A DNA stretch of 64,000 bases from Dendrobates tinctorius (GCF_039654945.1 NW_027361798.1:3472001-3536000); one strand, 5' to 3'; positions 1 through 57,297 are shown, counted from the stretch's first letter. Notes: generated by a model not told the origin, from the sequence alone. Numbers and translations are program-made.

Positions 1-3000
1 AGGAGGTGGAGGCACTGATCATACAGCTCTGCATGGAGGAGGTGGTGGCACTGATCATACAGCCCTGCAGGGAGGAGGTGGAGGCACTGATCATACAGCC
101 CTGCAGGGAGGAGGTGGTGGCACTGATCATACAGCTCTGCAGCGAGGAGGTGATGGCACTGATCATACAGCTCTGCAGCGAGGAGGTGATGGCACTGATC
201 ATACAGCTCTGCAGGGAGGAGGTGGAGGCACTGATCATACAGCCCTGCAGGGAGGAGGTGTTGGCATTGATCATACAGCCCTGCAGCGAGGAGGTGATGG
301 CACTGATCATACAGCTCTGCAGCGAGGAGGTGGCAGTGATTATACAGCTCTGCAGGGAGGTGTTGGCACTGATCATACAGCCCTGCAGCGAGGAGGTGGC
401 AGTGATTATACAGCTCTGCAGGGAGGAGGTGGTGGCACTGATCATACAGTCCTGCAGGGAGGAGGTGGAGGCACTGATCATACAGCCCTGCAGGGAGGAG
501 GTGGTGGCACTGATCATACAGCTCTGCAGCGAGGAGGTGATGGCACTGATCATACAGCTCTGCAGCGAGGAGGTGATGGCACTGATCATACAGCCCTGCA
601 GGGAGGAGGTGTTGGCACTGATCATACAGCCCTGCAGCGAGGAGGTGATGGCACTGATCATACAGCCCTGCAGCGAGGAGGTGGCAGTGATTATACAGCT
701 CTGCAGGGAGGAGGTGGTGGCACTGATCATACAGCCCTGCAGGGAGGAGGTGGAGGCACTGATCATACAGCCCTGCAGCGAGGAGGTGATGGCACTGATC
801 ATACAGCCCTGCAGCGAGGAGGTGGCAGTGATTATACAGCTCTGCAGGGAGGAGGTGGTGGCACTGATCATACAGCCCTGCAGGGAGGAGGTGGAGGCAC
901 TGATCATACAGCCCTGCAGGGAGGTGGTGGCACTGATCATACAGCCCTGCAGGGAGGAGGTGTTGGCACTGATCATACAGCCCTGCAGCGAGGAGGTGAT
1001 GGCACTGATCATACAGCTCTGCAGCTAGGAGGTGGCAGTGATTATACAGCTCTGCAGGGAGGTGATGGCACTGATCATACAGCTCTGCAGGGAGGAGGTG
1101 GAGGCACTGATCATACAGCCCTGCAGGGAGGTGTTGGCACTGATCATACAGACCTGCAGCGAGGAGGTGATGGCACTGATCATACAGCTCTGCAGTGAGG
1201 TGTTGGCACTGATCATACAGCCCTGCAGCGAGGAGGTGGCAGTGATTATACAGCTCTGCAGGGAGGTGTTGGCACTGATCATACAGCTCTGCAGGGAGGA
1301 GGTGGTGGCACTGATCATACAGCTCTGCAGGGATGAGGTGATGGCAGTGATCATACAGCTCTGCAGGGAGGAGGTGGTGGCACTGATCATACAGCTCTGC
1401 ATGGAGGAGGTGGTGGCACTGATCATACAGCTCTGCAGGGAGGAGGTGGCACTGATCATACAGCTCTGCAGGGAGGAGGTGGTGGCACTGATCATACAGC
1501 TCTGCATGGAGGAGGTGGTGGCACTGATCATACAGCCCTGCAGGGAGGAGGTGGAGGCACTGATCATACAGCCCTGCAGGGAGGAGGTGGTGGCACTGAT
1601 CATACAGCTCTGCAGCGAGGAGGTTGTGGCACTCATCATACAGCTCTGCAGCGAGGAGGTGATGGCACTGATCATACAGCTCTGCAGCGAGGAGGTGATG
1701 GTAGTGATCATACAGCTCTGCAAGGAGGAGGTGGTGACACTGATCAAACAGCTCTGCAGGGAGGAGGTGGTGGCACTGATCATACAGCTCTGCAAGGAGG
1801 AGGTGGTGGCACTGATCATACAGCTCTGCAGGGAGGAGGTGGTGGCACTGATCATACAGCTCTGCAGGGAGGAGGAGGTGGCACTTATCATACAGCTCTG
1901 CAGGGAGGAGGTGGTGGCACTGATCATACAGCTCTGCAGGGAGAAGGTGACACTGATCATACAGCTCTGCAGGGAGGAGGTGGTGGCACTGATCATACAG
2001 CTCTGCAGGGAGGAGGTGGTGGCACTGATCATACAGCTCTGCAGGGAGGAGGTGGTGGCACTGATCATACAGCTCTGCAGGGAGGAGGTTGTGGCACTCA
2101 TCATACAGCTCTGCAGGAAGGAGGTGGTGGCACTGATCATACAGCTCTGCAGCGAGGAGGTGATGGAACTGATCATACAGCCCTGCAGGAAGGAGGTGTT
2201 GGCACTGATCATACAGCCCTGCAGCGAGGAGGTGATGGCACTGATCATACAGCCCTGCAGCGAGGAGGTGGCAGTGATTATACAGCTCTGCAGGGAGGAG
2301 GTGGTGGCACTGATCATACAGCCCTGCAGGGAGGAGGTGGAGGCACTGATCATACAGCCCTGCAGGGAGGAGGTGTTAGCACTGATCATACAGCTCTGCA
2401 GGGAGGAGGTGGTGGCAGTGATCATACAGCTCTGCATGGAGGAGGTGGTGGCACTGATCATACAGTCCTGCAGGGAGGAGGTGGAGGCACTGATCATACA
2501 GCCCTGCAGGGAGGAGGTGGTGGCACTGATCATACAGCTCTGCAGCGAGGAGGTGATGGCACTGATCATACAGCTCTGCAGCGAGGAGGTGATGGCACTG
2601 ATCATACAGCCCTGCAGGGAGGAGGTGTTGGCACTGATCATACAGCCCTGCAGCGAGGAGGTGATGGCACTGATCATACAGCCCTGCAGCGAGGAGGTGG
2701 CAGTGATTATACAGCTCTGCAGGGAGGAGGTGGTGGCACTGATCATACAGCCCTGCAGGGAGGAGGTGGAGGCACTGATCATACAGCCCTGCAGGGAGGA
2801 GGTGTTGGCACTGATCATACAGCTCTGCAGGGAGGAGGTGGTGGCTGTGATAATACAGCTCTGCAGGAAGGAGGTGGTGGCACTGATCATACAGCTCTGC
2901 AGGGAGGAGGTGGTGGCACTGATCATACTGCTATGCAGGGAGGAGGTGGTGGCACTGATCATACAGCTCTGCAGGGAGGAGGTGGTGGCACTGATCATAC

Positions 3001-6000
3001 AGCTCTGCATGGAGGAGGTGGTGGCACTGATCATACAGCTCTGCAGGGAGGAGGTGGCACTGATCATACAGCTCTGCAGGGAGGAGGTGGTGGCACTGAT
3101 CATACAGCTCTGCATGGAGGAGGAGGTGGCACTGATCATACAGTCCTGCAGGGAGGAGGTGGAGGCACTGATCATACAGCCCTGCAGGGAGGAGGTGGCA
3201 CTGATCACACAGCTCTGCATGGAGGAGGTGGTGGCACTGATCATACAGCTCTGCATGGAGGAGGTGGTGGCACTGATCATACAGCTCTGCAGGGAGGAGG
3301 TGGTGGCACTGATCATACAGCTCTGCATGGAGGAGGTGGTGGCACTGATCATACAGCTCTGCAGGGAGGAGGTGGCACTGATCATACAGCTCTGCATGGA
3401 GGAGGTGGTGGCACTGATCATACAGCTCTGCAGGGAGGAGGTGGCACTGATCATACAGCTCTGCAGGGAGGAGGTGGTGGCACTGATCATACAGCTCTGC
3501 ATGGAGGAGGAGGTGGCACTGATCATACAGTCCTGCAGGGAGGAGGTGGTGGCACTGATCATACAGCTCTGCAGGGAGGAGGTGGTGGCTGTGATCATAC
3601 AGCTCTGCAGGAAGGAGGTGGTGGCACTGATCATACAGCTCTGCAGGGAGGAGGTGGTGGCACTGATCATACAGCTATGCAGGGAGGAGGTGGTGGCACT
3701 GATCATACAGCTCTGCAGGGAGGAGGTGGTGGCACTGATCATACAGCTCTGCATGGAGGAGGTGGTGGCACTGATCATACAGCTCTGCAGGGAGGAGGTG
3801 GCACTGATCATACAGCTCTGCAGGGAGGAGGTGGTGGCACTGATCATACAGCTCTGCATGGAGGAGGAGGTGGCACTGATCATAAAGTCCTGCAGGGAGG
3901 AGGTGGAGGCACTGATCATACAGCCCTGCAGGGAGGAGGTGGTGGCACTGATCATACAGCTCTGCAGCGAGGAGGTGATGGCACTGATCATACAGCTCTG
4001 CAGCGAGGAGGTGATGGCACTGATCATACAGCCCTGCAGGGAGGAGGTGTTGGCACTGATCATACAGCCCTGCAGCGAGGAGGTGATGGCACTGATCATA
4101 CAGCCCTGCAGCGAGGAGGTGGCAGTGATTATACAGCTCTGCAGGGAGGAGGTGGTGGCACTGATCATACAGCCCTGCAGGGAGGAGGTGGAGGCACTGA
4201 TCATACAGCCCTGCAGGGAGGAGGTGTTGTCACTGATCATACAGCCCTGCAGCGAGGAGGTGATGGCACTGATCATACAGCTCTGCAGCGAGGAGGTGGC
4301 AGTGATTATACAGCTCTGCAGGGAGGTGGAGGCACTGATCATACAGCCCTGCAGGGAGGAGGTGTTGTCACTGATCATACAGCCCTGCAGCGAGGAGGTG
4401 ATGGCACTGATCATACAGCTCTGCAGCGAGGAGGTGGCAGTGATTATACAGCTCTGCAGGGAGGTGATGGCACTGATCATACAGCTCTGCAGGGAGGAGG
4501 TGGTGGCACTGATCATACAGCCTTGCAGGGAGGTGTTGGCACTGATCATACAGCCCTGCAGCGAGGAGGTGATGGCACTGATCATACAGCTCTGCAGGGA
4601 GGTGTTGGCACTGATCATACAGCTCTGCAGGGAGGAGGTGGTGGCACTGATCATACAGCTCTGCAGGGATGAGGTGATGGCAGTGATCATACAGCTCTGC
4701 AGGGAGGAGGTGGTGGCACTGATCATACAGCTCTGCAGGGAGGAGGTGGTGGCACTGATCATACAGCTCTGCATGGAGGAGGTGGTGGCACTGATCATAC
4801 AGCTCTGCAGGGAGGAGGTGGCACTGATCATACAGCTCTGCAGGGAGGAGGTGGAGGCACTGATCATACAGCTCTGCATGGAGGAGGTGGTGGCACTGAT
4901 CATACAGCCCTGCAGGGAGGAGGTGGAGGCACTGATCATACAGCCCTGCAGGGAGGAGGTGGTGGCACTGATCATACAGCTCTGCAGCGAGGAGGTGATG
5001 GCACTGATCATACAGCTCTGCAGCGAGGAGGTGATGGCACTGATCATACAGCTCTGCAGGGAGGAGGTGGAGGCACTGATCATACAGCCCTGCAGGGAGG
5101 AGGTGTTGGCATTGATCATACAGCCCTGCAGCGAGGAGGTGATGGCACTGATCATACAGCTCTGCAGCGAGGAGGTGGCAGTGATTATACAGCTCTGCAG
5201 GGAGGTGTTGGCACTGATCATACAGCCCTGCAGCGAGGAGGTGGCAGTGATTATACAGCTCTGCAGGGAGGAGGTGGTGGCACTGATCATACAGTCCTGC
5301 AGGGAGGAGGTGGAGGCACTGATCATACAGCCCTGCAGGGAGGAGGTGGTGGCACTGATCATACAGCTCTGCAGCGAGGAGGTGATGGCACTGATCATAC
5401 AGCTCTGCAGCGAGGAGGTGATGGCACTGATCATACAGCCCTGCAGGGAGGAGGTGTTGGCACTGATCATACAGCCCTGCAGCGAGGAGGTGATGGCACT
5501 GATCATACAGCCCTGCAGCGAGGAGGTGGCAGTGATTATACAGCTCTGCAGGGAGGAGGTGGTGGCACTGATCATACAGCCCTGCAGGGAGGAGGTGGAG
5601 GCACTGATCATACAGCCCTGCAGCGAGGAGGTGATGGCACTGATCATACAGCTCTGCAGCGAGGAGGTGGCAGTGATTACACAGCTCTGCAGGGAGGTGA
5701 TGGCACTGATCATACAGCTCTGCAGGGAGGAGGTGGAGGCACTGATCATACAGCCCTGCAGGGAGGTGGTGGCACTGATCATACAGCCCTGCAGGGAGGA
5801 GGTGTTGGCACTGATCATACAGCCCTGCAGCGAGGAGGTGATGGCACTGATCATACAGCTCTGCAGCGAGGAGGTGGCAGTGATTATACAGCTCTGCAGG
5901 GAGGTGATGGCACTGATCATACAGCTCTGCAGGGAGGAGGTGGAGGCACTGATCATACAGCCCTGCAGGGAGGTGTTGGCACTGATCATACAGACCTGCA

Positions 6001-9000
6001 GCGAGGAGGTGATGGCACTGATCATACAGCTCTGCAGGGAGGTGTTGGCACTGATCATACAGCCCTGCAGCGAGGAGGTGGCAGTGATTATACAGCTCTG
6101 CAGGGAGGTGTTGGCACTGATCATACAGCTCTGCAGGGAGGAGGTGGTGGCACTGATCATACAGCTCTGCAGGGATGAGGTGATGGCAGTGATCATACAG
6201 CTCTGCAGGGAGGAGGTGGTGGCACTGATCATACAGCTCTGCATGGAGGAGGTGGTGGCACTAATCATACAGCTCTGCAGGGAGGAGGTGGCACTGATCA
6301 TACAGCTCTGCAGGGAGGAGGTGGTGGCACTGATCATACAGCTCTGCATGGAGGAGGTGGTGGCACTGATCATACAGCCCTGCAGGGAGGAGGTGGAGGC
6401 ACTGATCATACAGCCCTGCAGGGAGGAGGTGGTGGCACTGATCATACAGCTCTGCAGCGAGGAGGTTGTGGCACTCATCATACAGCTCTGCAGCGAGGAG
6501 GTGATGGCACTGATCATACAGCTCTGCAGCGAGGAGGTGATGGCACTGATCATACAGCCCTGCAGGGAGGAGGTGTTGGCACTGATCATACAGCCCTGCA
6601 GCGAGGAGGTGATGGCACTGATCATACAGCCCTGCAGCGAGGAGGTGGCAGTGATTATACAGCTCTGCAGGGAGGAGGTGGTGGCACTGATCATACAGCC
6701 CTGCAGGGAGGAGGTGGAGGCACTGATCATACAGCCCTGCAGGGAGGAGGTGTTGGCACTGATCATACAGCTCTGCAGGGAGGAGGTGGTGGCTGTGATC
6801 ATACAGCTCTGCAGGAAGGAGGTGGTGGCACTGATCATACAGCTCTGCAGGGAGGAGGTGGTGGCACTGATCATACAGCTCTGCAGGGATGAGGTGATGG
6901 CAGTGATCATACAGCTCTGCAGGGAGGAGGTGGTGGCACTGATCATACAGCTCTGCAGGGAGGAGGTGGTGGCACTGATCATACAGCTCTGCAGGGAGGA
7001 GGTGGTGGCACTGATCATACAGCTCTGCATGGAGGAGGTGGTGGCACTGATCATACAGCTCTGCAGGGAGGAGGTGGCACTGATCATACAGCTCTGCAGG
7101 GAGGAGGTGGTGGCACTGATCATACAGCTCTGCATGGAGGAGGTGGTGGCACTGATCATACAGTCCTGCAGGGAGGAGGTGGAGGCACTGATCATACAGC
7201 CCTGCAGGGAGGAGATGGTGGCACTGATCATACAGCTCTGCAGCGAGGAGGTGATGGCACTGATCATACAGCTCTGCAGCGAGGAGGTGATGGCACTGAT
7301 CATACAGCCCTGCAGGGAGGAGGTGTTGGCACTGATCATACAGCCCTGCAGCGAGGAGGTGATGGCACTGATCATACAGCCCTGCAGCGAGGAGGTGGCA
7401 GTGATTATACAGCTCTGCAGGGAGGAGGTGGTGGCACTGATCATACAGCCCTGCAGGGAGGAGGTGGAGGCACTGATCATACAGCCCTGCAGCGAGGAGG
7501 TGATGGCACTGATCATACAGCTCTGCAGCGAGGAGGTGGCAGTGATTATACAGCTCTGCAGGGAGGTGATGGCACTGATCATACAGCTCTGCAGGGAGGA
7601 GGTGGTGGCACTGATCATACAGCCCTGCAGGGAGGTGTTGGCACTGATCATACAGCCCTGCAGCGAGGAGGTGATGGCACTGATCATACAGCTCTGCAGG
7701 GAGGTGTTGGCACTGATCATACAGCCCTGCAGCGAGGAGGTGGCAGTGATTATACAGCTCTGCAGGGAGGTGTTGGCACTGATCATACAGCTCTGCAGGG
7801 AGGAGGTGGTGGCACTGATCATACAGCTCTGCAGGGATGAGGTGATGGCAGTGATCATACAGCTCTGCAGGGAGGAGGTGGTGGCACTGATCATACAGCT
7901 CTGCAGGGAGGAGGTGGTGGCACTGATCATACAGCTCTGCATGGAGGAGGTGGTGGCACTGATCATACAGCTCTGCAGGGAGGAGGTGGCACTGATCATA
8001 CAGCTCTGCAGGGAGGAGATGGAGGCACTGATCATATAGCTCTGCATGGAGGAGGTGGTGGCACTGATCATACAGCCCTGCAGGGAGGAGGTGGAGGCAC
8101 TGATCATACAGCCCTGCAGGGAGGAGGTGGTGGCACTGATCATACAGCTCTGCAGCGAGGAGGTGATGGCACTGATCATACAGCTCTGCAGCGAGGAGGT
8201 GATGGCACTGATCATACAGCTCTGCAGGGAGGAGGTGGAGGCACTGATCATACAGCCCTGCAGGGAGGAGGTGTTGGCATTGATCATACAGCCCTGCAGC
8301 GAGGAGGTGATGGCACTGATCATACAGCTCTGCAGCGAGGAGGTGGCAGTGATTATACAGCTCTGCAGGGAGGTGTTGGCACTGATCATACAGCCCTGCA
8401 GCGAGGAGGTGGCAGTGATTATACAGCTCTGCAGGGAGGAGGTGGTGGCACTGATCATACAGTCCTGCAGGGAGGAGGTGGAGGCACTGATCATACAGCC
8501 CTGCAGGGAGGAGGTGGCACTGATCATACAGCTCTGCAGGGAGGAGGTGGTGGCACTGATCATACAGCTCTGCATGGAGGAGGTGGTGGCACTGATCATA
8601 CAGCCCTGCAGGGAGGAGGTGGAGGCACTGATCATACAGCCCTGCAGGGAGGAGGTGGTGGCACTGATCATACAGCTCTGCAGCGAGGAGGTTGTGGCAC
8701 TCATCATACAGCTCTGCAGCGAGGAGGTGATGGCACTGATCATACAGCTCTGCAGCGAGGAGGTGATGGTAGTGATCATACAGCTCTGCAAGGAGGAGGT
8801 GGTGACACTGATCAAACAGCTCTGCAGGGAGGAGGTGGTGGCACTGATCATACAGCTCTGCAAGGAGGAGGTGGTGGCACTGATCATACAGCTCTGCAGG
8901 GAGGAGGTGGTGGCACTGATCATACAGCTCTGCAGGGAGGAGGAGGTGGCACTTATCATACAGCTCTGCAGGGAGGAGGTGGTGGCACTGATCATACAGC

Positions 9001-18000: not shown

Positions 18001-20317
18001 TCATACAGCCCTGCAGCGAGGAGGTGGCAGTGATTATACAGCTCTGCAGGGAGGAGGTGGTGGCACTGATCATACAGCCCTGCAGGGAGGAGGTGATGGC
18101 ACTGATCATACAGCTCTGCAGCGAGGAGGTGGCAGTGATCATACAGCTCTGCAGGGAGGTGTTGGCACTGATCATACAGCCCTGCAGCGAGGAGGTGGCA
18201 GTGATTATACAGCTCTGCAGGGAGGAGGTGGTGGCACTGATCATACAGCCCTGCAGGGAGGAGGTGGTGGCACTGATCATACAGCCCTGCAGGGAGGAGG
18301 TGGAGGCACTGATCATACAGCCCTGCAGGGAGGAGGTGTTGGCATTGATCATACAGCCCTGCAGCGAGGAGGTGATGGCACTGATCATACAGCTCTGCAG
18401 CGAGGAGGTGGCAGTGATTATACAGCTCTGCAGCGAGGAGGTGGCAGTGATTATACAGCCCTGCAGCGAGGAGGTGGCAGTGATCATACAGCTCTGCAGG
18501 GAGGAGGTGGCACTGATCATTCAGCTCTGCAGGGAGTAGGTGTTGGCACTGATCATACAGCTCGGCAGGGAGGAGGTGGTGGCAGTGATCATACAGCTCT
18601 GCAGGGAGGAGGTGGTGGCACTGATCATACAGCTCTGCAGGGAGGAGGTGGAGGCACTGATCATACACCTTTGCAGGGAGGAGGTGGAGGCACTGATCAT
18701 ACAGCTCTGCAGGGAGGAGGTAATGGCATTGGTCACACAGCTCTGCAGGGAGGAGGTGGTGGCAGTGATCATACACCTCTGCAGGGAGGAGGTGGTGGCT
18801 CTGAACATACAGCTCTGCAGGGAGGAGGTGGCAGTGATCATACAGCTCTGCAGGGAGGAGGTGATGGCACTGATAATACAGCTCTGCAGGGAGGAGTTGG
18901 TGGCACAGATCATACAGCTCTGCAGGGAGGAGGTGATGGCACTGATAATACAGCTGTGCAGGGAGGAGGTGGTGGCACTGATCATACAGCTCTGCAGGGA
19001 GGATGTGGTGACACTGATCATACAGCTCTGCAGGGAGGAGGTGGTGACACTGATCATACAGCTCTGCAGGGAGGAGGTGGTGGCTCTGAACATACAGCTC
19101 TGCAGGGAGGAGGTGGCAGTTATCATACAGCTATGCAGGGAGGAGGTGGTGGCGCTGATAATACAGCTCTGCAGGGAGGAGGTGATGGCAGTGATCTTAC
19201 AGCTCAGCAGGGAGGAGGTGGTGGCACTGATCATACAGCTCTACAGGGAGGAGGTGGTGTCAGTGATCATACAGCTCTGCAGGGAGGAGGTGATGGCACT
19301 GATCATACAGCTCTGCAGGGAGGAGGTGGTGGCACTGATCATACAACTCTACAGGGAGGAGGTGGCAATGATCATTCAGCTCTGCAGGGAGTAGGTGGTG
19401 GCACTGATCATGCAGCTCTGCAGGGAGGAGGTGGTGCCACTGATCATTCAGCTCGGGAGGGAGGAGGTGATGGCACTGATCATACAGCTCTGCAGCAAGG
19501 AGGTGGTGGCAATGATCATACAGCTCTGCAGGGAGTAGGTGGCACTGATCATACAGCTCTGCAGGGAGGAGGTGATGGCTCTGATCATTCAGTTCTGCAG
19601 GGAGAAGGTGGTGGCTCTGATAATACAGCTCTGCAGGGAGGAGGTGGTGGCACTGATCATACTGCTCTGCAGGGAGGAGGTGGTGGCATTGATCATGCAG
19701 CTCTGCAGGGAGGAGGTGGTGGCACTGATCATACAGCTCTGCAGGGAGGAGGAGGTGGCACTGATCATACAACTCTGCAGGGAGGAGGTGGTAGCACTGA
19801 TCATACAACTCTGGAGTGAGGAGGTGATGGCTCTGATCATACAGCTCTGCAGGGAGTCGGTGGTGGCACTGATCATACAGCTCTGCAGGGAGGAGGTGGT
19901 GGCACTGATCATACAACTCTGCAGGGAAGAGGTAGTAGTGATCATACAGCTTTGCAGGGAAGATGTGGCACTGATCATTCAGCTCTGAAGGGAGGAGGTG
20001 ATGGCACTGATCATACAGCTCTGCAAGGAGGAGGTGATGGCACTGATCATACAGCTCTGTAGGGAGGAGGAGGTGGCACTGATCATACAGCTCTGCAGTG
20101 AGGAGGTGGTGGCACTGATCATACAACTCTGCAGGGAGGAGGTGGCACGTGGCAGTGATCATACAGCTCTGTAGGGAGGAAGTGGTGGCACTGATCATAC
20201 AACTCTGCAGGGAAGAAGGTGGCACTGATCATACAGCTCTGAAGGGAGGAGGCAATGGCACTGATAATATAGCTCTGCAGGGATGAAGTAGCAGTGATCA
20301 TACAGCACTGCAGGGAG
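1..20317. repeat. Satellite A: tandem array of 36-bp (and 33-bp) monomers, consensus GGGAGGAGGTGGTGGCACTGATCATACAGCTCTGCA; continues beyond the left edge
   Basis: Head-to-tail monomers throughout. Length variants come from gain or loss of one GGA/GGT triplet. Rare variants recur with a 7032-bp period (2933/9965; 8039/15071). Confidence 0.99.
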
Positions 20318-22957
20318 TACAAGAATACAAGACTAGAAGGATACAACTTATTTGCAAGAAACAGACTTGATAAACGAGGAGGAGGTGTCGCATTGTATGT
20401 TAGAAATGCGTATATCTGTACAGAGGTTGAAGCTTCAGAGACTGGGAGTTCTGTGGAAACTGTTTGGGTAAGAATACAAGGACAGAACAATGGAAAGGAC
20501 ACCATTGTAGGCATTTACTACAGGCCGCCTGTGCAAGCTGAAGATATGGATGAACTCTTTATGCATCAAATGGCCAAGTTCTCCAAAAAATATGACATAG
20601 TTATCATGGGAGATTTCAACTACCCAGACATTTGTTGGGAATCTCTCTCAGGCAAAACTAACAGGTCAAGGAAATTCTTATCCTCTCTTGCTGACAACTT
20701 TATCTTCCAAAAGGTAAGGGAGAAAACAAGGGGAACTGCTACCTTGGATCTAATCCTTATAAACAGGGAGGAAATGGTTGAGGAGGTAAAAGTGGCTGGG
20801 ACCCTAGGAGGTAGCGACCATGCTATTTTAGAATTTTGGATAACTAGAGGCGGAAGACCTGTGAAGACTCAGACGTCAAGGTTAGATTTCAGAAAGGCAG
20901 ATTTTAAGGGATTCAGAAAGAGAATTGGAGGGATCCAATGGCTGGATATCCTTAAAGACAAAAATGTCCAGGAAGGATGGGAAATCTTGAAAAATGAAAT
21001 TCTCAAAGGACAGTTGTTAACAATTCCGAAAAGAGGGAAGAATAGGAAGCATTTAAGGAAACCAGGATGGATGAACACAGAACTTAAGCACATGCTAAAA
21101 AGGAAAAAAAAAATCTTTATAAAATGGAAAGAGGGAGGCATATCTAAAGAAGAATATAATGCTGTCTGCAGAACCCGCAGGGCACAAATCAGATTAGCTA
21201 AAGCTGAAAATGAATTGAGGCTTGCAAGAGATGTCAAAAGCAATAATAAAGGATTTTGGGGATATGTCAAAAGTAAAAGAAAAGTCAAAGATGCTATAGG
21301 ATTTTTACAGGATGAAAATGATGAAATGGTAAGACAGGATGTTGAGAAGGCTGAACTTTTAAATTCCTATTTTGCATCTGTTTTCTCTCAGAAAGGAAAT
21401 GTAACATCAACTGTTATTCACTGTCCTATTAAGGGAATAGAAGAATCCAGGATATCTATAAACAGAAAGATAGTGAGGAAACACTTAGCTAACCTAAATG
21501 AATTCAAGTCTCCAGGTCCAGATGAATTACACCCCAGAGTACTGAAGGAGATAGCAGAAGAAATTTTTGAACCCCTCTCCATAATCTTTGAAAATTCTTG
21601 GAGAACAGTAGATGTGCCAGAAGACTGGAGAAGAGCAAATGTTGTTCCTATCTTCAAAAAGGGGAAGAAGGTGGACCCAGGCAACTATAGGCCGGTGAGT
21701 CTGACTTCTATACCAGGAAAGATCTTTGAACAAAATATTAAACAACATGTATGTCAATACCTGGATAAGAATGAAGTGATTAAACAGAGTCAGCATGGGT
21801 TTGTAACTAATAAGTCATGTCAGACTAATTTAATTTCCTTCTATGACGGTATTACTGATTGGGTGGATCAAGGAAATGCTGTAGATATAGTATATCTTGA
21901 CTTCAGCAAAGCATTTGACAAAGTCTCTCATACAATCCTTATTGAAAAAATGACTAAGTATGGAATGGACAAGGCAACTGTTAGGTGGATTCATAACTGG
22001 CTTAGTGATCGGACCCAAAGAGTGGTCGTAAATGGCTGCACATCCAGTTGGAAGAATGTCTCAAGTGGGGTACCACAGGGCTCTGTCCTGGGCCCTGTAT
22101 TGTTCAACATCTTTATCAACGATTTAGATGAAGGAATTGAGGGTAAACTGATTAAATTTGCTGATGACTCAAAGCTAGGAGGGATAGCTAATACTAGAGA
22201 AGAGAGAGAGAGGATTCAAAAAGATTTAAATAAACTGGAGAAGTGGGCAGCAACTAACAGAATGGTTTTTAACAGGGAGAAATGCAAAGTACTACATCTG
22301 GGCAATAAAAATGAAAAAAGCATATATAGAATGGGAGGAATAGGGCTAAGTGACAGCACATGTGAAAAAGACTTGGGTATACTAATAGATCACAGACTGA
22401 ATATGAGTCAACAGTGTGATGCAGCAGCAAAAAAGGCAAATGCAATTCTAGGATGTATTAACAGAAGCATACAGTCTAGATCACGTGAAGTAATTATTTC
22501 CCTCTACTCCTCTTTGGTCAGACCTCATCTGGAATACTGTGTCCAATTTTGGGCACCACATTTTAAAAAAGACATCAACAAACTGGAGCAAGTTCAGAAA
22601 AGAGCGACCAGAATGGTGACCGGTCTGCAAACCCTGTCTTATGAGGAAAGGTTGCAGGATTTGGGAATGTTTAGTTTGCAAAAGAGAAGACTGAGAGGAG
22701 ACTTAATAGCTGTCTACAAATATCTAAAGGGCTGTCACATTGTAGAAGGATCAACTTTATTCTCATTTGCACAAGGAAAGACTAGAAGCAATGGGATGAA
22801 GCTGAATGGGAGGAGACACAGATTAGATATTAGAAAAAACTTTTTGACAGTTAGAGTGATCAATGAGTGGAACAGGCTGCCACGAGAAGTGGTGAGTTCT
22901 CCTTCCATGGAAGTCTTCAAACAGAGGCTGGACAGACATCTAACTGGGATGATTTAG
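20318..22957 (+). pseudogene. CR1 ORF2 (endonuclease + reverse transcriptase), uninterrupted but missing its N-terminus
   Basis: About 880 open codons to TAG at 22955-22957. The track start at 20294 is a GTG inside the satellite, not a real start. Confidence 0.9.
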
Positions 22958-23043
22958 CGAATCCTGCTTTGAGCAGGGGGTTGGACCAGATGGCCCAGGA
23001 GGTCCCTTCCAACTCTACGATTCTATGATTCTATGATTCTATG
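20318..23043 (+). mobile_element. CR1-clade LINE, 5'-truncated, inserted in satellite A
   Basis: ORF2 with APE endonuclease motifs (GIYYRPP, MGDFN, LDLIL, SDH) and RT motifs (YRPVSL, QHGF, YLDFSKAFD, GVPQGSVLGP, FADD). Short 3' UTR ends in (ATTCTATG)x3 at 23020-23043, the CR1 tail. Confidence 0.97.
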
Positions 23044-26000
23044 AGGAGGTGGTGGCACTGATCATACAGCTCTGCAGGGAGGAGGTGGTGGCACTGATCA
23101 TACAGCTCTGCAGGGAGGAGGTGGTTGCACTGATCATACATCTCTGCAGGGAGGAGGTGATGGCATTGATCATACAGCTCTGCAGGGAGTAGGTGGAGGC
23201 TCTGACCATACAGCTCTGCAGTGAGGAGGTGGTGGCAGTGATCATACAGCTCTGCAGGGAGGAGGTGGCACTGATCATACAGCTCTGCAGGGAGGAGTTG
23301 GTGGCACTGATCATAAAGCTCTGCCTAGGAAGAGGTGATGGCACTGATCATACAGCTCTGCAGGGAGGAGGTGGTGACACTGATCATACAGCTCTGCAGG
23401 GAGGAGGTGGCACTGATCATTCAGCTCTGCAGGGAGTAGGTGGTGGCACTGATCATACAGCTCGGCAGGGAGGAGGTGATGGCATTGGTCATACAGCTCT
23501 GCAGGGAGGAGGTGGTGGCACTGATCATACAGCTCTGCAGGGAGGAGGTGGTGGCACTGATCATACAGCTCTGCAGGGAGGAGGTGGTGACACTGATCAT
23601 AAAGCTCTGCAGGGAGAAGGTGGTGGCACTAATCATACAGCTCTGCAGGGAGAAGGTGGTGGCACTAATAATACAGCTCTGAAGGGAGGAGGCAATGGCA
23701 CTGATCATACAGCTCTGCAGGGAGGAGGTGATTGCACTGATCATATATCTCTGCAGGGAGGAGGTGGTGCCACTGATCATACAGCTCTGGAGGGAGGAGG
23801 TGATGGCACTGATCATACAGCTGTGCAGGAAAGAGGTGGTGGCACTGATCATACAGCTCTGCAGGGAGGAGGTGGCACTGATTATACAGCTTTGCAGGGA
23901 GGAGGTGATGGCTCTGATCATACAGATCTGCAGGGAGAAGGTGGTGGCACTGATAATACAGCTCTGCAGGGTGGAGGTGGTGGCACTGATCATACAGCTC
24001 TGCAGGGAGGAGGTGGTGGCACTGATCATACAGCTCTGCAGGGAGGAGGTGGAGGCACTGATCATACAGCTCTGGAGTGAGGAGGTGATGGCACTGATCA
24101 TACAGCTCTGCAGGAAGGAGGTGGTGGCACTGATCATACAGCTCTGCAGGGAGGAGGAGGTGGCACTGATCATACAGCTCTGCAGGGAGGAGGTGGTGGC
24201 ACTGATCATACAGCTCTGCAGGAAGGAGGTGGTGGCACTGATCATACATCTCTGGAGTGAGGAGGTGATGGCACTGATCATACAGCTCTGCAGGGAGGAG
24301 GTGGTGGCACTGATCATACAGCTCTGCAGGGAGGAGGAGGTGGCACTGATCATACAGCTCTGCAGGAAGGAGGTGGTGGCACTGATCATACAGCTCTGCA
24401 GGGAGGAGGAGGTGGCACTGATCATACAGCTCTGCAGGGAGGAGGTGGTGGCACTGATCATACAGCTCTGCAGGGAGGTGATGGTAGTGATCATACAGCT
24501 CTGCAGGGAGGAGGTGGTGGCACTGATCATACAACTCTGCAGGGAGGAGGTGGTGGCACTGATCATACAACTCTGCAGGGAGGAGGAGGTGGCACTGATC
24601 ATACAGCTCTGCAGGGAGGAGGTGGTGGCACTGATCATACAGCTCTGCAGCGAGGAGGTGATGGCACTGATCATACAGCTCTGCAGGGAAAAGGTGGTGG
24701 CACTGATCATACAGCTCTGCAGGGAGGAGGTGGTGGCACTGATCATACAGCTCTGCAGGGAGGAGGTGGTGGCACTGATCATACAGCTCTGCAGGGAGGA
24801 GGTGGTGGCACTGATCATACAGCTCTGCAGGAAGGAGGTGATGGCACTGATCATACAGCTGTGCAGGGAGGAGGTGGTGGCACTGATCATACAGCTCTGC
24901 AGGGAGGAGGTGATGGCACTGATCATACAGCTCTGCAGTGAGGAGTTGGTGGCACTGATCATACAGTTCTGCAGGGATGAGGTTGCTTTGATCATACAGC
25001 TCTGCAGGGAGGAGGCGGTGGCACTGATCATACAGCTCTGCATGAAGGAGGTGGTGGGACTGATCATACAGCTCTGCATGGAGGAGGCAATGGCACTGAT
25101 CATACAGCTCTGCAGGGAGGAAGTAGTGGCAGTGATCATATATCTCTGCAGGGAGGAAGTGGTGACACTGATCATACAGCTCTGCAGGGAGGAGGTGGTG
25201 GCACTGATCATACAGCTCTGCAGGGATGAGGTGGTGGCAGTGGTCATACAACTCTGCAGGGAGGTGGTGTTGGCACTGATCATACAGCTCTGCAGGGAGG
25301 AGGTGGAGGCACTGATCATACAGCTCTGGAGGGAGAAGGTGGTGGAACTAATCATACAGCTCTGAAGGGAGGAGGCAATGGCACTGATCATACAGCTCTG
25401 CAGGGAGGAGGTGGTGGTACTGATCATACAGCTTTGCAGGGAGGAGGTGGTGGCACTGATCATACAGCTATGCAGGGAGGAGGTGGTGGGACTGATCCTA
25501 CAGCTCTGCAGGGAAGAGGCAATGGCACTGATCATACAGCTCTGCAGGGAGTAGGTGGTGGAACTAATCATACAGCTCTGCAGGGAGGTGATGGTAGTGA
25601 TCATACAGCTGTGCAAGGAGGAGGTGGTGACACTGATCATACAGCTCTGCAGGGAGGAGGTGGTGGCACTGATCATACAGCTCTGCAGGGAGGAGGTGGT
25701 GGCACTGATCATACAGCTCTGCAGGGTGGAGGTGGTGGCACTGATCATACAGCTCTGCAGGGAGGTGATGGTAGTGATCATACAGCTCTGCAGGGAGGAG
25801 GTGGTGGCACTGATCATACAGCTCTGCAGGGAGGTGATGGCACTGATCATACAGCTCTGCAGGGAGGAGGTGGTGGCACTGATCATACCGCTCTGCAGGG
25901 AGGAGGTGGTTGCACTGATCATACATCTCTGCAGGGAGGAGGTGATGGCATTGATCATACAGCTCTGCAGGGAGTAGGTGGAGGCTCTGACCATACAGCT

Positions 26001-28876
26001 CTGCAGTGAGGAGGTGGTGGCAGTGATCATACAGCTCTGCAGGGAGGAGTTGGTGGCACTGATCTTACAGCTCTGCCTGGGAAGAGGTGATGGCACTGAT
26101 CATACAGCTCTGCAGGGAGGAGTTGGTGGCACTGATCATAAAGCTCTGCCTAGGAAGAGGTGATGGCACTGATCATACAGCTCTGCAGGGAGGAGGTGGT
26201 GACACTGATCATACAGCTCTGCAGGGAGGAGGTGGCACTGATCATTCAGCTCTGCAGGGAGTAGGTGGTGGCACTGATCATACAGCTCGGCAGGGAGGAG
26301 GTGATGGCATTGGTCATACAGCTCTGCAGGGAGGAGGTGGTGGCACTGATCATACAGCTCTGCAGGGAGGAGGTGGTGGCACTGATCATACAGCTCTGCA
26401 GGGAGGAGGTGGTGACACTGATCATAAAGCTCTGCAGGGAGAAGGTGGTGGCACTAATCATACAGCTCTGCAGGGAGAAGGTGGTGGCACTAATAATACA
26501 GCTCTGAAGGGAGGAGGCAATGGCACTGATCATACAGCTCTGCAGGGAGGAGGTGATTGCACTGATCATATATCTCTGCAGGGAGGAGGTGGTGCCACTG
26601 ATCATACAGCTGTGCAGGAAAGAGGTGGTGGCACTGATCATACAGCTCTGCAGGAAGGAGGTGGCACTGATTATACAGCTTTGCAGGGAGGAGGTGATGG
26701 CTCTGATCATACAGATCTGCAGGGAGAAGGTGGTGGCACTGATAATACAGCTCTGCAGGGTGGAGGTGGTGGCACTGATCATACAGCTCTGCAGGGAGGA
26801 GGTGGTGGCACTGATCATACAGCTCTGCAGGGAGGAGGTGGAGGCACTGATCATACAGCTCTGGAGTGAGGAGGTGATGGCACTGATCATACAGCTCTGC
26901 AGGAAGGAGGTGGTGGCACTGATCATACAGCTCTGCAGGGAGGAGGAGGTGGCACTGATCATACAGCTCTGCAGGGAGGAGGTGGTGGCACTGATCATAC
27001 AGCTCTGCAGGAAGGAGGTGGTGGCACTGATCATACATCTCTGGAGTGAGGAGGTGATGGCACTGATCATACAGCTCTGCAGGGAGGAGGTGGTGGCACT
27101 GATCATACAGCTCTGCAGAGAGGAGGAGGTGGCACTGATCATACAGCTCTGCAGGAAGGAGGTGGTGGCACTGATCATACAGCTCTGCAGGGAGGAGGAG
27201 GTGGCACTGATCATACAGCTCTGCAGGGAGGAGGTGGTGGCACTGATCATACAGCTCTGCAGGGAGGTGATGGTAGTGATCATACAGCTCTGCAGGGAGG
27301 AGGTGGTGGCACTGATCATACAACTCTGCAGGGAGGAGGTGGTGGCACTGATCATACAACTCTGCAGGGAGGAGGAGGTGGCACTGATCATACAGCTCTG
27401 CAGGGAGGAGGTGGTGGCACTGATCATACAGCTCTGCAGCGAGGAGGTGATGGCACTGATCATACAGCTCTGCAGGGAAAATGTGGTGGCACTGATCATA
27501 CAGCTCTGCAGGGAGGAGGTGGTGGCACTGATCATACAGCTCTGCAGGGAGGAGGTGGTGGCACTGATCATACAGCTCTGCAGGGAGGAGGTGGTGGCAC
27601 TGATCATACAGCTCTGCAGGGAGGAGGTGATGGCACTGATCATACAGCTGTGCAGGGAGGAGGTGGTGGCACTGATCATACAGCTCTGCAGGGAGGAGGT
27701 GATGGCACTGATCATACAGCTCTGCAGTGAGGAGTTGGTGGCACTGATCATACAGTTCTGCAGGGATGAGGTTGCTTTGATCATACAGCTCTGCAGGGAG
27801 GAGGCGGTGGCACTGATCATACAGCTCTGCATGAAGGAGGTGGTGGGACTGATCATACAGCTCTGCATGGAGGAGGCAATGGCACTGATCATACAGCTCT
27901 GCAGGGAGGAAGTAGTGGCAGTGATCATATATCTCTGCAGGGAGGAAGTGGTGACACTGATCATACAGCTCTGCAGGGAGGAGGTGGTGGCAGTGGTCAT
28001 ACAGCTCTGCAGGGATGAGGTGGTGGCAGTGGTCATACAACTCTGCAGGGAGGTGGTGTTGGCACTGATCATACAGCTCTGCAGGGAGGAGGTGGAGGCA
28101 CTGATCATACAGCTCTGGAGGGAGAAGGTGGTGGAACTAATCATACAGCTCTGAAGGGAGGAGGCGGTGGCACTGATCATACAGCTCTGCAGGGAGGAGG
28201 TGGTGGTACTGATCATACAGCTTTGCAGGGAGGAGGTGGTGGCACTGATCATACAGCTCTGCAGGGAGGAGGTGGTGGGACTGATCCTACAGCTCTGCAG
28301 GGAAGAGGCAATGGCACTGATCATACAGCTCTGCAGGGAGTAGGTGGTGGAACTAATCATACAGCTCTGCAGGGAGGTGATGGTAGTGATCATACAGCTC
28401 TGCAAGGAGGAGGTGGTGACACTGATCATACAGCTCTGCAGGGAGGAGGTGGTGGCACTGATCATACAGCTCTGCAGGGAGGAGGTGGTGGCACTGATCA
28501 TACAGCTCTGCAGGGAGGAGGTGGTGGCACTGATCATACAGCTCTGCAGGGTGGAGGTGGTGGCACTGATCATACAGCTCTGCAGGGAGGTGATGGTAGT
28601 GATCATACAGCTCTGCAGGGAGGAGGTGGTGGCACTGATCATACAGCTCTGCAGGGAGGTGATGGCACTGATCATACAGCTCTGCAGGGAGGAGGTGGTG
28701 GCACTGATCATACAGCTCTGCAGGGAGGTGATGGTAGTGATCATACAGCTCTGCAGGGAGGAGGTGGTGGCACTGATCATACAGCTCTGCAGGGAGGAGG
28801 TGGTGGCACTGATCATACAGCTCTGCAGGGAGGAGGTGGTGGCACTGATCATACAGCTCTGCAGTGAGGAGGTGGT
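23044..28876. repeat. Satellite A, H1-proximal block (more diverged monomers, contains a ~2.8-kb tandem duplication)
   Basis: Same monomer. Diagnostic variants repeat at 23440/26265 and 25555/28344. The block ends flush against the H1 stem-loop. Confidence 0.99.
28852..28860 (-). promoter_or_regulatory. Histone downstream element (U7 snRNA-binding site) of H1, lying in the first satellite monomer
   Basis: Minus strand AGAGCTGTA, 16 nt after the stem-loop; complementary to UACAGCUCU near the 5' end of vertebrate U7. Confidence 0.85.
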
Positions 28877-28892
28877 GGCTCTGATAAGAGCC
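28877..28892 (-). terminator. Histone 3' stem-loop of H1
   Basis: Minus strand cacaaa-GGCTCT-TATC-AGAGCC-accac, about 30 nt after the stop codon. Confidence 0.96.
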
Positions 28893-28921
28893 TTTGTGGG
28901 ATGAGGACAAGGCGGCTCCAC

Positions 28922-29557
28922 TTATTTCTTGGCCGCGGGCTTCTTTGCTTTAGCCGCTTTCTTAGCCGGACTCTTGGCAGCTTTGGGTTTTGCCGCCTTC
29001 TTAGCGGGGCCCTTCGTCACCTTCTTGGGCTTCGGAGCGGCCTTTGGCTTCTTGGGGCTCTTGTCTGCTTTTTTGGCTGCTGCGGGCTTCTTGGCTTTTT
29101 TCGGGCTCTTCTTGGCCGCGGTCGGAGCCTTCTTAGGCTTTTTCGGGGATTTGGCCGCTTTCTTGGCTGCGGGTTTCTTGGCCGCAGCCGCCGGCTTTTT
29201 CTTGTCCTTGGTCTCCTGCTTCTTGTTCAGCTTGAATGACCCGGAGGCGCCGCTGCCTTTTATCTGGAGCAGGGCGCCCTTAGTGACCAGACCCCTGACG
29301 GCCAGCTTCAGGCGGCTGTTATTCTTCTCCACATCGTACCCTCCGGCAGCCAGAGCCTTCTTCAGGGCGGCCAGAGACACCCCGCTGCGCTCCTTGGAGG
29401 CGGACACGGCTTTGACGATCAGCTCGGACACGCTGGGGCCGGAGGGCTTCTTGCTCTTCTTGGCGCTCCCTGCAGCGGATTTCTTTGGCTGCTTCTTGGA
29501 CTTGGCGGCCGGTTCGGCGGGAGGAGGAGGCGCGGCGGCTGGTGCGGTCTCTGCCAT
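28922..29557 (-). CDS. H1: Linker histone H1 (replication-dependent, 211 aa)
   Basis: MAETAPAA N-terminus, globular domain [46 protein letters not shown]...[17 protein letters not shown]-rich tail with SPKK motifs; no introns; stem-loop present. Confidence 0.99.
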
Positions 29558-30812: not shown

Positions 30813-31599
30813 GCACTAATAGAGGATTATACCCACTGTGCCAGGCACTAATAGACGGTTATACCCACTGTGCCAAGCACTAATAGAGGATTATACCCAC
30901 TGTGCCAAGCACTAATAGAGGATTATACCCACTGTGCCTCCAAGCACTAATAGAGGATTATACCCACTGTGAATCACTAATAGAAGACTTTACCCACTGT
31001 GCCAGTCACTAATAGAGGATTATACCCACTGTGCCAGTCACTAATAGATGGTTATACCCACTGTGCCAAGCACTAATAGAGGATTATACCCACTGTGCCA
31101 AACACTAATAGAGGATTATACCTACTGTGCCTCCAAGCACAAATAGAGGATTATACCCACTGTGCCTCCAAGCACTAATAGAGGATTATACCCACTGTGA
31201 ATCACTAATAGAAGACTTTACCCACTGTGCCAGTCACTAATAGAGGATTATACCCACTGTGCCAGTCACTAATAGATGGTTATACCCACTGTGCCAAGCA
31301 CTAATAGAGGATTATACCCACTGTGCCAAGCACTAATAGAGGATTATACCTACTGTGCCAAACACTAATAGAGGATTATACCTACTGTGCCTCCAAGCAC
31401 AAATAGAGGATTATACCCACTGTGCCTCCAAGCACTAATAGAGGATTATACCCACTGTGAATCACTAATAGAAGACTTTACCCACTGTGCCAGTCACTAA
31501 TAGAGGATTATACCCACTGTGCCAGGCACTAATAGAGGATTATACCCACTGTGCCAGGCACTAATAGAGGATTATACCCACTATGCCAGGCACTCATAG
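30813..31599. repeat. Minisatellite B, ~32-bp unit GCACTAATAGAGGATTATACCCACTGTGCCAA
   Basis: About 24 tandem copies between the H1 and H4 promoters. Confidence 0.97.
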
Positions 31600-31951: not shown

Positions 31952-32275
<324 letters not shown>

Positions 32276-32307
32276 TTGTATTCTCGTCTCTGTCCTGACA
32301 ACCCAAA

Positions 32308-32323
32308 GGCTCTTCTCAGAGCC
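32308..32323 (+). terminator. Histone 3' stem-loop of H4
   Basis: cccaaa-GGCTCT-TCTC-AGAGCC-gccca, followed by purine-rich GAGAGGCTG at 32339-32347. Confidence 0.96.
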
Positions 32324-42549: not shown

Positions 42550-42762
42550 ATAATTAGTTGGCAACAGTATCCGGGTCTCCTGTTGTGTTCATGTTTCTAC
42601 CACCTGAACTGTAATCCCTGGGCTCCAACGCAGCCAGTTGTTGCTCAGAAGTGCCGTCTGCACAGAGAAAAACACTAGCTCCTGTGTTATTGGGGTTCAG
42701 TAACGCCAGCTGCTCCCCTGCTGTGTGTCCGGCAATATCTCCTGCTCTGTTGTGAGCTCATT

Positions 42763-52741: not shown

Positions 52742-52746
52742 CATTT

Positions 52747-57265: not shown

Positions 57266-57297
57266 TTTGGTTGTGTAAATGGGATCGGCGGTAGCGC

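What the first reader, a model, noticed from the sequence alone, without database searches (positions are those of the whole stretch)
1..28892. A >26-kb satellite built from the H1 3'-processing signal: several hundred tandem U7 snRNA-binding sites downstream of H1
Seen: in H1 sense (minus strand) the gene ends GGCTCTT-ATCAGAGCC-ACCACCTCCTCACTGC-AGAGCTGTA-TG and runs with no spacer into monomers ATCAGTGCC-ACCACCTCCTCCCTGC-AGAGCTGTA-TG. The 36-bp monomer is therefore the loop end and 3' arm of the stem-loop (one A>T change), the ACCAC cleavage region and the downstream element, at native spacing. The other four histone genes here have similar elements (CAGAGCTG, AGAGCTG, GAGAGGCTG, GATGAGCT) at the same position. 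Established: vertebrate U7 snRNA carries UACAGCUCU near its 5' end and pairs with this element; amphibian oocyte histone genes are known to read through into flanking satellite (newt lampbrush loops), and U7-rich histone locus bodies attach at these loci. Inference: about 740 monomers (26 kb / ~35 bp) would make H1 read-through RNA a polyvalent U7 snRNP scaffold or sponge, or a fail-safe cleavage/termination array, lacking SLBP sites because the 5' stem arm is absent. Plus-strand transcripts would instead mimic U7 and be antisense to histone downstream elements. I know of no described satellite with this origin. Function is unproven; neutral slippage amplification is the null model.
Basis: partly seen in the sequence, partly recalled or inferred. 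Interest (0 to 1): 0.92.

Follow-up and report, generated by a model that had tools for sequence, protein, structure and literature searches.

The report
Satellite grown from histone H1's end signal
In the dyeing poison frog, the short signal that ends the histone H1 messenger RNA has been copied about 735 times into a satellite of at least 29 kb directly behind the gene, so each repeat looks like a docking site for U7 snRNA, but nothing here shows that the repeats do more than accumulate.

Summary
Window 1..28885 is a tandem array of about 735 units (571 of 36 bp, 157 of 33 bp). It abuts the H1 gene on the minus strand and is split by one CR1-type LINE insert (20318..23043). A second array in the same orientation lies at 60421..61799, upstream of H3.

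The first unit is the native H1 3' signal: the 3' half of the stem-loop, ACCAC, and the downstream element AGAGCTGTA. It matches the satellite consensus at 34 of 36 positions. At both differences the native unit carries the state required by the stem or shared with paralogous histone genes. The direction H1 signal to satellite is therefore well supported (about 0.9).

Units pair with the mammalian U7 5' arm as well as native H1 does (-14.0 kcal/mol). That is better than the other four histone genes here and better than 99.75% of shuffled units.

Function is unproven:
- The U7-pairing core is not more conserved than the rest of the unit.
- The array grows by multi-kb block duplication and tolerates transposon insertions.
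- The available RNA-library contigs do not show read-through.

The best reading is a gene-signal-derived satellite of neutral origin. A role as U7 scaffold or fail-safe terminator remains possible (about 0.15).

The scan had already noted this satellite on other pieces of the same genome, and one follow-up reached the same reading.

The parts
28922..29557 (-). Histone H1 gene (211 aa, intact ORF including stop)
   Evidence: ORF list. Pfam Linker_histone E=1e-21. Best homologs are dendrobatid H1 proteins.
28877..28892 (-). H1 3' stem-loop GGCTCT-TATC-AGAGCC
   Evidence: Sequence. Rfam Histone3 31.9 bits, E=1.7e-5, spanning 28851..28897.
28850..28885 (-). Native unit: loop end and 3' stem arm (ATCAGAGCC), ACCAC cleavage region, spacer, HDE core AGAGCTGTA (28852..28860), TG. 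This is the founder copy of the satellite.
   Evidence: 34/36 identity to the satellite consensus, in phase with the array. U7 duplex -14.0 kcal/mol.
23044..28849 (-). Proximal, more diverged part of the 36/33-bp satellite. It includes a block of about 2 kb duplicated at offset 2789 bp (about 99.5% identity).
   Evidence: Units that keep the ancestral AGAGCC are found only between about 18.8 and 26.7 kb.
20318..23043 (+). 5'-truncated CR1-type LINE inserted into one satellite unit, with a (TCTATGAT)n tail
   Evidence: Sequence. 98.4% identical over 1497 bp to the copy at 35917..37413. That other copy's ORF matches Pfam RVT_1.
1..20317 (-). Distal satellite, runs off the window start. Built of higher-order blocks, including about 6 kb duplicated at offset 7032 bp with about 100% identity.
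60421..61799 (-). Second array of the same family and orientation (39 units). It ends about 430 bp upstream of the H3 start codon. Its far end is cut by retrovirus-like DNA.
   Evidence: About 89.7% identity to array 1.
61800..64000 (-). Retrovirus-like insertion (LTR-like end abutting the satellite, env-like ORF 62714..63991) that truncates array 2
   Evidence: Sequence. Weak Pfam TLV_coat match, E=2.5e-4. Described only, not reconstructed.
31955..32347 (+). H4 gene with its own stem-loop and HDE (AGAGGCTG, 16 nt after the stem)
57225..57690 (-). H2A gene with stem-loop and HDE (AGAGCTG, 18 nt after the stem)
58023..58467 (+). H2B gene (58124..58260 masked as N, left untouched) with stem-loop and HDE (AGAGCTG, 17 nt after the stem). 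If read through it would enter array 2 on the plus strand.
59511..59991 (-). H3 gene with stem-loop and weak HDE (ATGAGCT, 17 nt after the stem)

Best explanation
The 36-bp satellite is a tandem amplification of the 3' half of the histone H1 pre-mRNA processing signal: half stem-loop, ACCAC cleavage region, spacer and U7-complementary downstream element. A small duplication arose at the H1 3' end. Slippage, and then unequal exchange of multi-kb blocks, expanded it inside the H1-to-H3 spacer of a tandemly repeated histone quintet. It persists as ordinary, selectively near-neutral satellite DNA. As a by-product, any H1 read-through RNA would carry hundreds of stem-loop-less U7 pairing sites at native spacing. 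Shown: anatomy, junction, polarity, pairing potential, and growth by block duplication. Inferred: the slippage founder event and neutrality.
For: Junction and homology:
- The native unit is in phase with the array and matches the consensus 34/36. The other histone 3' ends match only weakly.

Polarity:
- The native A at unit position 6 is needed to pair in the stem.
- The native CTCAC is shared with H4 and H2B.
- The Rfam stem-loop model hits once behind each of the five genes and never in the satellite.

Satellite dynamics:
- About 6 kb is duplicated at offset 7032 bp with about 100% identity, and about 2 kb at offset 2789 bp with about 99.5%.
- Units form higher-order patterns.
- 33-bp units arise from 3-bp deletions in the (ACC)2/(TCC)2 tracts.
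- A CR1 LINE and a retrovirus-like element are inserted and tolerated.

No sign of selection:
- Unit position 28, inside the core, is 26% G.
- Mean conservation of the core equals that of the rest.
- Singleton variants are not depleted in the core (chi-square p=0.46).

Other:
- Earlier scan notes report arrays from about 29 units to 47 kb at other histone clusters of this genome. These are unchecked.
Against: - The units keep a U7 duplex as strong as the native H1 site in 64% of copies, and at or below -12 kcal/mol in 89%.
- The commonest core variant (A to G) keeps pairing as G.U (-13.1).
- No AATAAA or ATTAAA occurs anywhere in the satellite on either strand. An H1 read-through transcript therefore has no alternative 3'-end signal for kilobases.
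- Satellite words occur in contigs of RNA-labelled libraries of this species and of two related species labels, in one at higher depth than H1.
- None of these points excludes neutrality.
Confidence: 0.62

Rival explanations
1. The array is functional as RNA. H1 read-through transcripts (minus strand) act in one of two ways. They may be a locus-tethered polyvalent U7 snRNP scaffold that concentrates U7 at the histone locus body. Or they may be a fail-safe zone where U7 snRNP, binding without SLBP, cuts at a fixed distance from each HDE and lets CPSF73 degrade the transcript and terminate Pol II before it reaches the co-oriented H3 promoter.
For: - Each unit has a 9-bp U7 duplex (-14.0 kcal/mol) at native distance from ACCAC. 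This is as good as or better than the five native HDEs here (-7.4 to -14.0), against -6.95 +/- 2.07 for shuffled units. Mouse H2a gives -17.2.
- PMC7026596 states that substrates forming a strong duplex with U7 are processed without SLBP. [quoted passage not shown]
- No poly(A) signal exists in the array.
- H1, the satellite and H3 are co-oriented.
- Read-through from histone promoters into satellite DNA is documented in newt and Xenopus oocytes (PMC11602149).
- Amphibian oocyte spheres at histone loci contain U7 snRNP (PMC12046345).
- Satellite contigs occur in RNA-labelled libraries.
Against: - The core shows no excess conservation.
- 21% of units have the spacer shortened by 3 nt.
- TE insertions are tolerated.
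- By earlier notes, array length varies from about 1 kb to about 47 kb between cluster copies.
- No RNA contig bridges 28868..28909, and the tool warns that DNA in RNA libraries can explain the satellite contigs.
- Multi-unit sense RNA is predicted to fold partly over the HDE.
- The frog's own U7 was not retrieved.
- 29 kb is far more than a terminator needs.
Confidence: 0.15
2. Reverse polarity: an independent satellite existed first and overwrote the H1 3' flank by gene conversion or unequal exchange. On this view H1 borrowed its downstream element from the satellite.
For: The native unit and the consensus differ at only 2 of 36 positions, so ongoing exchange between the first unit and the array is plausible.
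Against: - The unit contains the 3' arm of the universal histone stem-loop and ACCAC, which make sense only as part of a histone signal.
- The satellite carries the stem-breaking T where the native copy has the pairing A.
- The spacer and HDE of native H1 resemble those of the paralogous H4, H2A and H2B genes in position and in the CTCAC motif.
- The Rfam model covers the native copy end to end.
Confidence: 0.05
3. The size and block structure of the array are partly an assembly artefact: a real but shorter satellite inflated by mis-assembly of long reads.
For: About 6 kb is duplicated with about 100% identity at offset 7032 bp, which assemblers can produce in satellites.
Against: - An independent run of the same species holds satellite words at roughly 5- to 20-fold the word depth of the H1 3' UTR and coding region.
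- Two different transposons sit in the arrays with clean junctions.
- Similar arrays are noted on many other pieces of the genome.
- This rival affects only the length, not the nature, of the feature.
Confidence: 0.1
4. The long open reading frames in the satellite (up to 891 codons) encode a repetitive protein.
For: Four of six frames are open, because 36 bp equals 12 codons without stops.
Against: Openness is a mechanical result of the unit length. The 33-bp units also keep frame, for the same reason. A search of 5.8 billion proteins with 300 aa of the repeat gave nothing at E<=1e-5. No start context or promoter is present other than H1 read-through.
Confidence: 0.01

Closest known systems
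Newt (Notophthalmus viridescens) histone clusters separated by long tracts of satellite 1, with giant read-through transcription units on lampbrush loops (Diaz & Gall 1985, as cited in PMC11602149; sphere/HLB attachment per PMC12046345)
   Same: Histone quintets are embedded in tens of kb of satellite in an amphibian. The satellite lies downstream of histone genes, so promoter read-through could transcribe it, potentially from both strands: H1 into array 1, H2B into array 2.
   Different: To my knowledge the newt satellite has a unit of about 222 bp and has not been traced to a histone processing signal. Here the unit is 36 bp and is itself the H1 half stem-loop plus HDE. Transcription is not shown here.
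PcP190 satellite of hyloid frogs, derived from 5S rDNA (PMC11675491, PMC4201667)
   Same: A satellite whose unit descends from part of a functional, tandemly repeated gene family in frogs. It is a case of a gene-derived satellite.
   Different: PcP190 derives from a transcribed RNA gene body (120-bp conserved region in a unit of about 190 bp) and is dispersed to other chromosomal sites. Here the source is a 36-nt cis-acting RNA-processing signal, and the founder copy is still in place at the array's edge.
HDE-like U7-complementary motifs in human LTR12 elements and lincRNAs (PMC11417402)
   Same: A repeated non-histone sequence that matches the U7 5' end, with U7 proposed to act on it outside histone mRNA processing.
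   Different: Those motifs are dispersed retroviral LTR copies and are reported to act on transcription via NF-Y. Here the motifs are a head-to-tail array physically continuous with a histone gene and descended from a true HDE.
Canonical replication-dependent histone 3' processing signal (stem-loop + HDE; PMC7026596)
   Same: ACCAC cleavage region and U7-complementary purine core, with the core starting 16 nt after the stem position, as in the window's own five genes.
   Different: The 5' arm of the stem is absent and the 3' arm carries a stem-breaking change. No SLBP site is predicted, so units are at best SLBP-independent U7 substrates.

Membership tests
Histone pre-mRNA 3' processing signal | 16-nt stem-loop (6-bp stem, 4-nt loop) bound by SLBP | tested here: not met
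   The native H1 copy has it (Rfam Histone3 31.9 bits, E=1.7e-5). Satellite units lack the 5' arm and give no Rfam hit in 27000..28850 or 60421..61799.
Histone pre-mRNA 3' processing signal | ACCCA/ACCA-type cleavage region just 3' of the stem position | tested here: met
   ACCAC at unit positions 10-14. Position 10 is A in 89% of units, position 11 is C in 69%, and positions 12-14 are 95-98% conserved.
Histone pre-mRNA 3' processing signal | Downstream element complementary to the U7 5' arm at native distance | tested here: met
   9-bp duplex, -14.0 kcal/mol, equal to native H1. 89% of units are at or below -12, and only 0.25% of shuffled units do as well. Caveat: the U7 arm is the human/mouse sequence from PMC7026596, not this frog's.
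Histone pre-mRNA 3' processing signal | U7 snRNP binding and CPSF73 cleavage | not testable with these tools
   Needs CLIP or in vitro processing.
Satellite DNA | Long head-to-tail array of a short unit with higher-order or block structure and homogenisation | tested here: met
   About 735 units over at least 28.9 kb, with block duplications at offsets 7032 and 2789 bp.
Satellite DNA | Present at several loci or array copies in the genome | tested here: met
   There is a second array in the window. An independent run of the same species shows high word depth for the satellite. Earlier scan notes place it at other histone clusters; these are unchecked by me.
Gene-derived satellite (PcP190-like) | Unit homologous to part of a functional gene, with polarity from gene to satellite | tested here: met
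   34/36 to the H1 native unit. The stem-breaking change is derived in the satellite.
Newt-type histone/satellite read-through unit | Histone clusters separated by long satellite tracts | tested here: met
   Array 1 lies behind H1 and array 2 lies ahead of H3, flanking one quintet.
Newt-type histone/satellite read-through unit | Transcription of the satellite by read-through from histone promoters | tested here: inconclusive
   Satellite contigs occur in RNA-labelled libraries of three organism labels, but none bridges the H1 cleavage site and DNA carry-over is not excluded.
Scaffold or sponge RNA for an snRNP | Abundant RNA with many binding sites that sequesters or concentrates the partner | not testable with these tools
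   Only the multiplicity of sites is shown. Abundance and binding are unknown.

The most novel reading that the evidence does not exclude
The satellite is transcribed from the H1 promoter, and from H2B on the other strand. Its RNA is a chromatin-tethered array of hundreds of SLBP-independent U7 snRNP sites. It either helps build or enlarge the histone locus body by concentrating U7, or serves as a U7-dependent fail-safe cleavage and termination zone that replaces the missing poly(A) signals between H1 and H3. This would be a cis-acting processing signal turned into an architectural or terminator satellite.
Probability: 0.15. Interest if true: 0.85.

Novelty: new variant of a known kind. Interest (0 to 1): 0.58.

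Why it matters
The birth of a satellite is rarely caught with the founder copy still in place and still functional. Here the first unit is the working H1 3' signal, so origin, polarity and growth mode can be read directly. It also creates a natural construct that histone-mRNA researchers would otherwise have to build: hundreds of stem-loop-less U7 target sites in cis to a histone gene, repeated across a histone locus. That makes three questions directly testable in one species: whether HDE multiplicity recruits U7 snRNP or nucleates histone locus bodies, whether U7 can cut without SLBP in vivo, and how Pol II terminates behind histone genes. If the repeats are inert, the case still documents that an RNA-processing signal can seed a large satellite.

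Tried and rejected
- Rfam at gathering thresholds gave nothing in the window. With E-value thresholds it gave only the five histone stem-loops and chance hits.
- No U7 gene lies in the window, and the frog's own U7 could not be fetched. PMC5054213 holds no sequences in its text and Wu & Gall 1993 is not held. I used the human/mouse 5' arm instead.
- I tried to reach H1 3' flanks of relatives. The three Logan contigs fetched (L001-L003) are distant vertebrates with ordinary stem-loop/HDE ends and no satellite.
- I searched 5.8 billion proteins with a translated satellite frame, hoping to find the repeat in other assemblies. No hit.
- An exact scan of metagenome contigs for the unit gave none.
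- A cluster look-up of the H1 protein found the exact sequence is not in the collection.
- Read laying gave presence of satellite words in RNA-labelled contigs but no bridging contig and no strand information.
- A coding reading of the long ORFs is rejected: openness is mechanical and the protein search found nothing.
- Literature searches combining satellite DNA with U7/HDE, histone clusters or poison frogs found no description of this satellite.


Full report
**What is there**

Tandem Repeats Finder finds one 36-bp array over window 1..28885 and a second at 60421..61799.

I anchored on the core AGAGCTGTA and parsed 733 units. Of these, 571 are 36 bp and 157 are 33 bp. There are 156 distinct sequences, and the commonest (105 copies) equals the consensus. 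The array runs off the window start, so 28.9 kb is a minimum.

The array is split at 20318..23043 by a 5'-truncated CR1-type LINE with a (TCTATGAT)n tail, inserted cleanly into one unit. That insert is 98.4% identical to another copy at 35917..37413.

The window holds one histone quintet:
- H1 at 28922..29557 (-)
- H4 at 31955..32275 (+)
- H2A at 57298..57690 (-)
- H2B at 58023..58403 (+). Its masked N run at 58124..58260 was left untouched.
- H3 at 59581..59991 (-)

Transposons fill the space between H4 and H2A. The assembly is GCA_039654945.1, which a preprint names as Dendrobates tinctorius. The nearest H1 proteins are from other dendrobatids.

**The junction**

In H1 sense the 3' UTR ends with the stem-loop GGCTCT-TATC-AGAGCC (28892..28877). 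ACCAC, an 11-nt spacer, AGAGCTGTA and TG follow. Satellite units start at 28849 with no spacer.

The 36 nt from the loop's A (28885) to 28850 match the satellite consensus at 34 of 36 positions and are in phase with the array. The consensus aligns only weakly to the 3' ends of H4, H2A, H2B and H3.

The Rfam histone stem-loop model hits exactly five times, once behind each histone gene (27.9-32.9 bits). It never hits inside either array.

**Polarity**

The native copy and the consensus differ at two positions.
- At unit position 6 the native A pairs in the stem, whereas the satellite T would break it.
- At position 21 the native CTCAC is shared with H4 and H2B.

All five genes place an AGAGCTG-like core 16-18 nt after the stem. 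The H1 signal is therefore ancestral and the satellite derived.

Units that still carry AGAGCC occur only between about 18.8 and 26.7 kb, in the older and more diverged part near H1 and the LINE. Array 2 also contains such a unit.

**U7 pairing**

I could not retrieve this frog's U7. I used the 5' arm that is identical in human and mouse U7, as printed in PMC7026596.

| Sequence | Duplex energy with U7 5' arm (kcal/mol) |
|---|---|
| Native H1 element | -14.0 (9 bp) |
| Satellite consensus | -14.0 (9 bp) |
| Other four histone genes in the window | -7.4 to -13.8 |
| Commonest core variant (A to G, 26% of units) | -13.1 (keeps a G.U pair) |
| Shuffled units | -6.95 +/- 2.07; 0.25% as good as the consensus |
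| Mouse H2a element | -17.2 |

Across the array, 64% of units reach -14 and 89% reach -12.

Two caveats apply. A five-unit sense RNA is predicted to fold partly over the core. The antisense strand also scores well in this crude model (-16.9) through its purine run.

**How the array behaves**

The HDE core is not more conserved than the rest of the unit.
- Position 28, inside the core, is the second most variable site (26% G).
- Mean identity of the core equals that of the other positions.
- Singleton variants are not depleted in the core (chi-square p=0.46).

I regard this test as weak. Selection on any one of about 700 copies would be negligible, and variation is dominated by copied blocks.

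Other features are typical of a satellite:
- The 33-bp units arise from two different 3-bp deletions in the slippage-prone (ACC)2 and (TCC)2 tracts. Each deletion shortens the distance from cleavage site to HDE.
- About 6 kb is duplicated at an offset of 7032 bp with about 100% identity, and about 2 kb at 2789 bp with about 99.5%.
- The distal part is built of recurring higher-order patterns.
- Two transposons sit inside the arrays.

Together this is the behaviour of an ordinary satellite growing by unequal exchange.

**Setting**

H1, array 1, array 2 and H3 are all on the minus strand. Array 2 ends about 430 bp upstream of the H3 start codon. Its far end is cut by retrovirus-like DNA with an env-like ORF.

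Earlier unchecked notes of this scan describe macro-repeats of about 53-57 kb made of quintet plus satellite. They also describe arrays from about 29 units to 47 kb at other copies. One earlier follow-up on a neighbouring array reached the same reading as mine.

The satellite therefore occupies the H1-to-H3 spacer of a tandemly repeated histone unit, much as satellite 1 separates newt histone clusters.

Neither strand of the satellite contains AATAAA or ATTAAA. The only such hexamers in 1..28885 lie in the LINE insert.

**Transcription**

I laid contigs of four public runs on 28700..29300.
- Satellite words occur in RNA-labelled libraries of the same species (depth about 2, against about 4-8 for the H1 coding region).
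- They also occur in libraries of two other organism labels. In one, satellite depth is about 100 against H1 at about 10,000-20,000. In the other it is about 5,000 against H1 at about 300-900.
- No RNA contig covers 28868..28909, so none bridges the cleavage site.
- Contigs have no strand, and the tool warns that DNA in RNA libraries could explain the signal. With a satellite this abundant, that is quite possible.

The family thus exists in at least two related species labels. Transcription is neither shown nor excluded.

Run X15 is probably DNA, judging by its mean contig length of about 45 nt. It shows satellite variants with clustered A-to-G changes in H1 sense. These are either genomic variants or editing. 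This stays unexplained (notebook).

**Mechanism**

The best-supported account is a founder duplication of the 36-nt segment at the H1 3' end, expanded by slippage and then by unequal exchange of blocks, and selectively near-neutral.

The functional alternative rests on established biochemistry:
- Substrates with a strong U7 duplex are processed without SLBP.
- CPSF73 then degrades the downstream product 5'-3' (PMC7026596).
- Read-through from histone promoters into satellite DNA is documented in newt and Xenopus oocytes (PMC11602149).
- Amphibian oocyte spheres at histone loci contain U7 snRNP (PMC12046345).

A minus-strand read-through RNA here would be a chain of such sites with no competing poly(A) signal. 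It could act as a fail-safe terminator ahead of H3 or as a U7 concentrator. H2B read-through would enter array 2 on the plus strand, so both strands could be made. All of this is inference.

**Novelty**

Searches of the held literature found no satellite linked to U7 or the HDE, and nothing on histone-associated satellites in poison frogs.

The closest known cases are:
- gene-derived frog satellites such as PcP190 from 5S rDNA;
- the newt histone/satellite architecture;
- dispersed U7-complementary motifs in human LTR12 elements.

I class this as a new variant of a known kind. Origin is firmly supported and function is open.

Noticed in passing
window 31955..32275 (+): The H4 ORF is 106 aa and its N-terminal tail reads [17 protein letters not shown]. 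Compared with my memory of canonical H4 ([14 protein letters not shown]), that is an extra GKG. H4 products of both 103 and 106 aa are called next to H1 on Ranitomeya imitator contigs, so the longer form may be shared among dendrobatids. An earlier scan note flags the same feature.
   Followed up: partly
window 28700..28870, run X15: A contig piece ends at 28868, 9 nt past the H1 stem, and runs into Illumina adapter. Satellite variants with four A-to-G changes (H1 sense) within 25 nt are seen, and A-to-G at unit position 34 takes 13% of depth against 0.5% in the window. These are either genomic variant units (three of the four changes create CpG) or ADAR-type editing of satellite RNA. Unresolved.
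   Followed up: no
window 30813..31599, 33929..35917, 37419..37863, 56613..56733: A second, unrelated 32-bp tandem repeat (unit GGATTATACCCACTGTGCCAAGCACTAATAGA) recurs four times in the histone spacers. One block abuts the CR1 copy at 35917.
   Followed up: no
window 47453..48426: Tandem repeats of 27 and 34 bp, C-rich on the plus strand, give long spurious ORFs in several frames.
   Followed up: no
window 35893..56100: The space between H4 and H2A is packed with transposons. These include a CR1-type RT (35893..37242), a BED-zinc-finger hAT-like ORF (39187..42459), and Ty3/gypsy gag-protease-RT and integrase ORFs (46160..47086, 49654..51822, 52675..56044).
   Followed up: partly
window 61800..64000: Retrovirus-like DNA with a 425-aa env-like ORF (weak TLV_coat match, E=2.5e-4) and an LTR-like end is inserted into a satellite unit. 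It is in the same orientation as H1 and H3. Described only.
   Followed up: partly
window 20318..23043 vs 35917..37413: The CR1 insert inside the satellite has an 879-codon open stretch with only 2 stops in its frame. It is 98.4% identical to the second copy, which suggests a recently active LINE family.
   Followed up: partly
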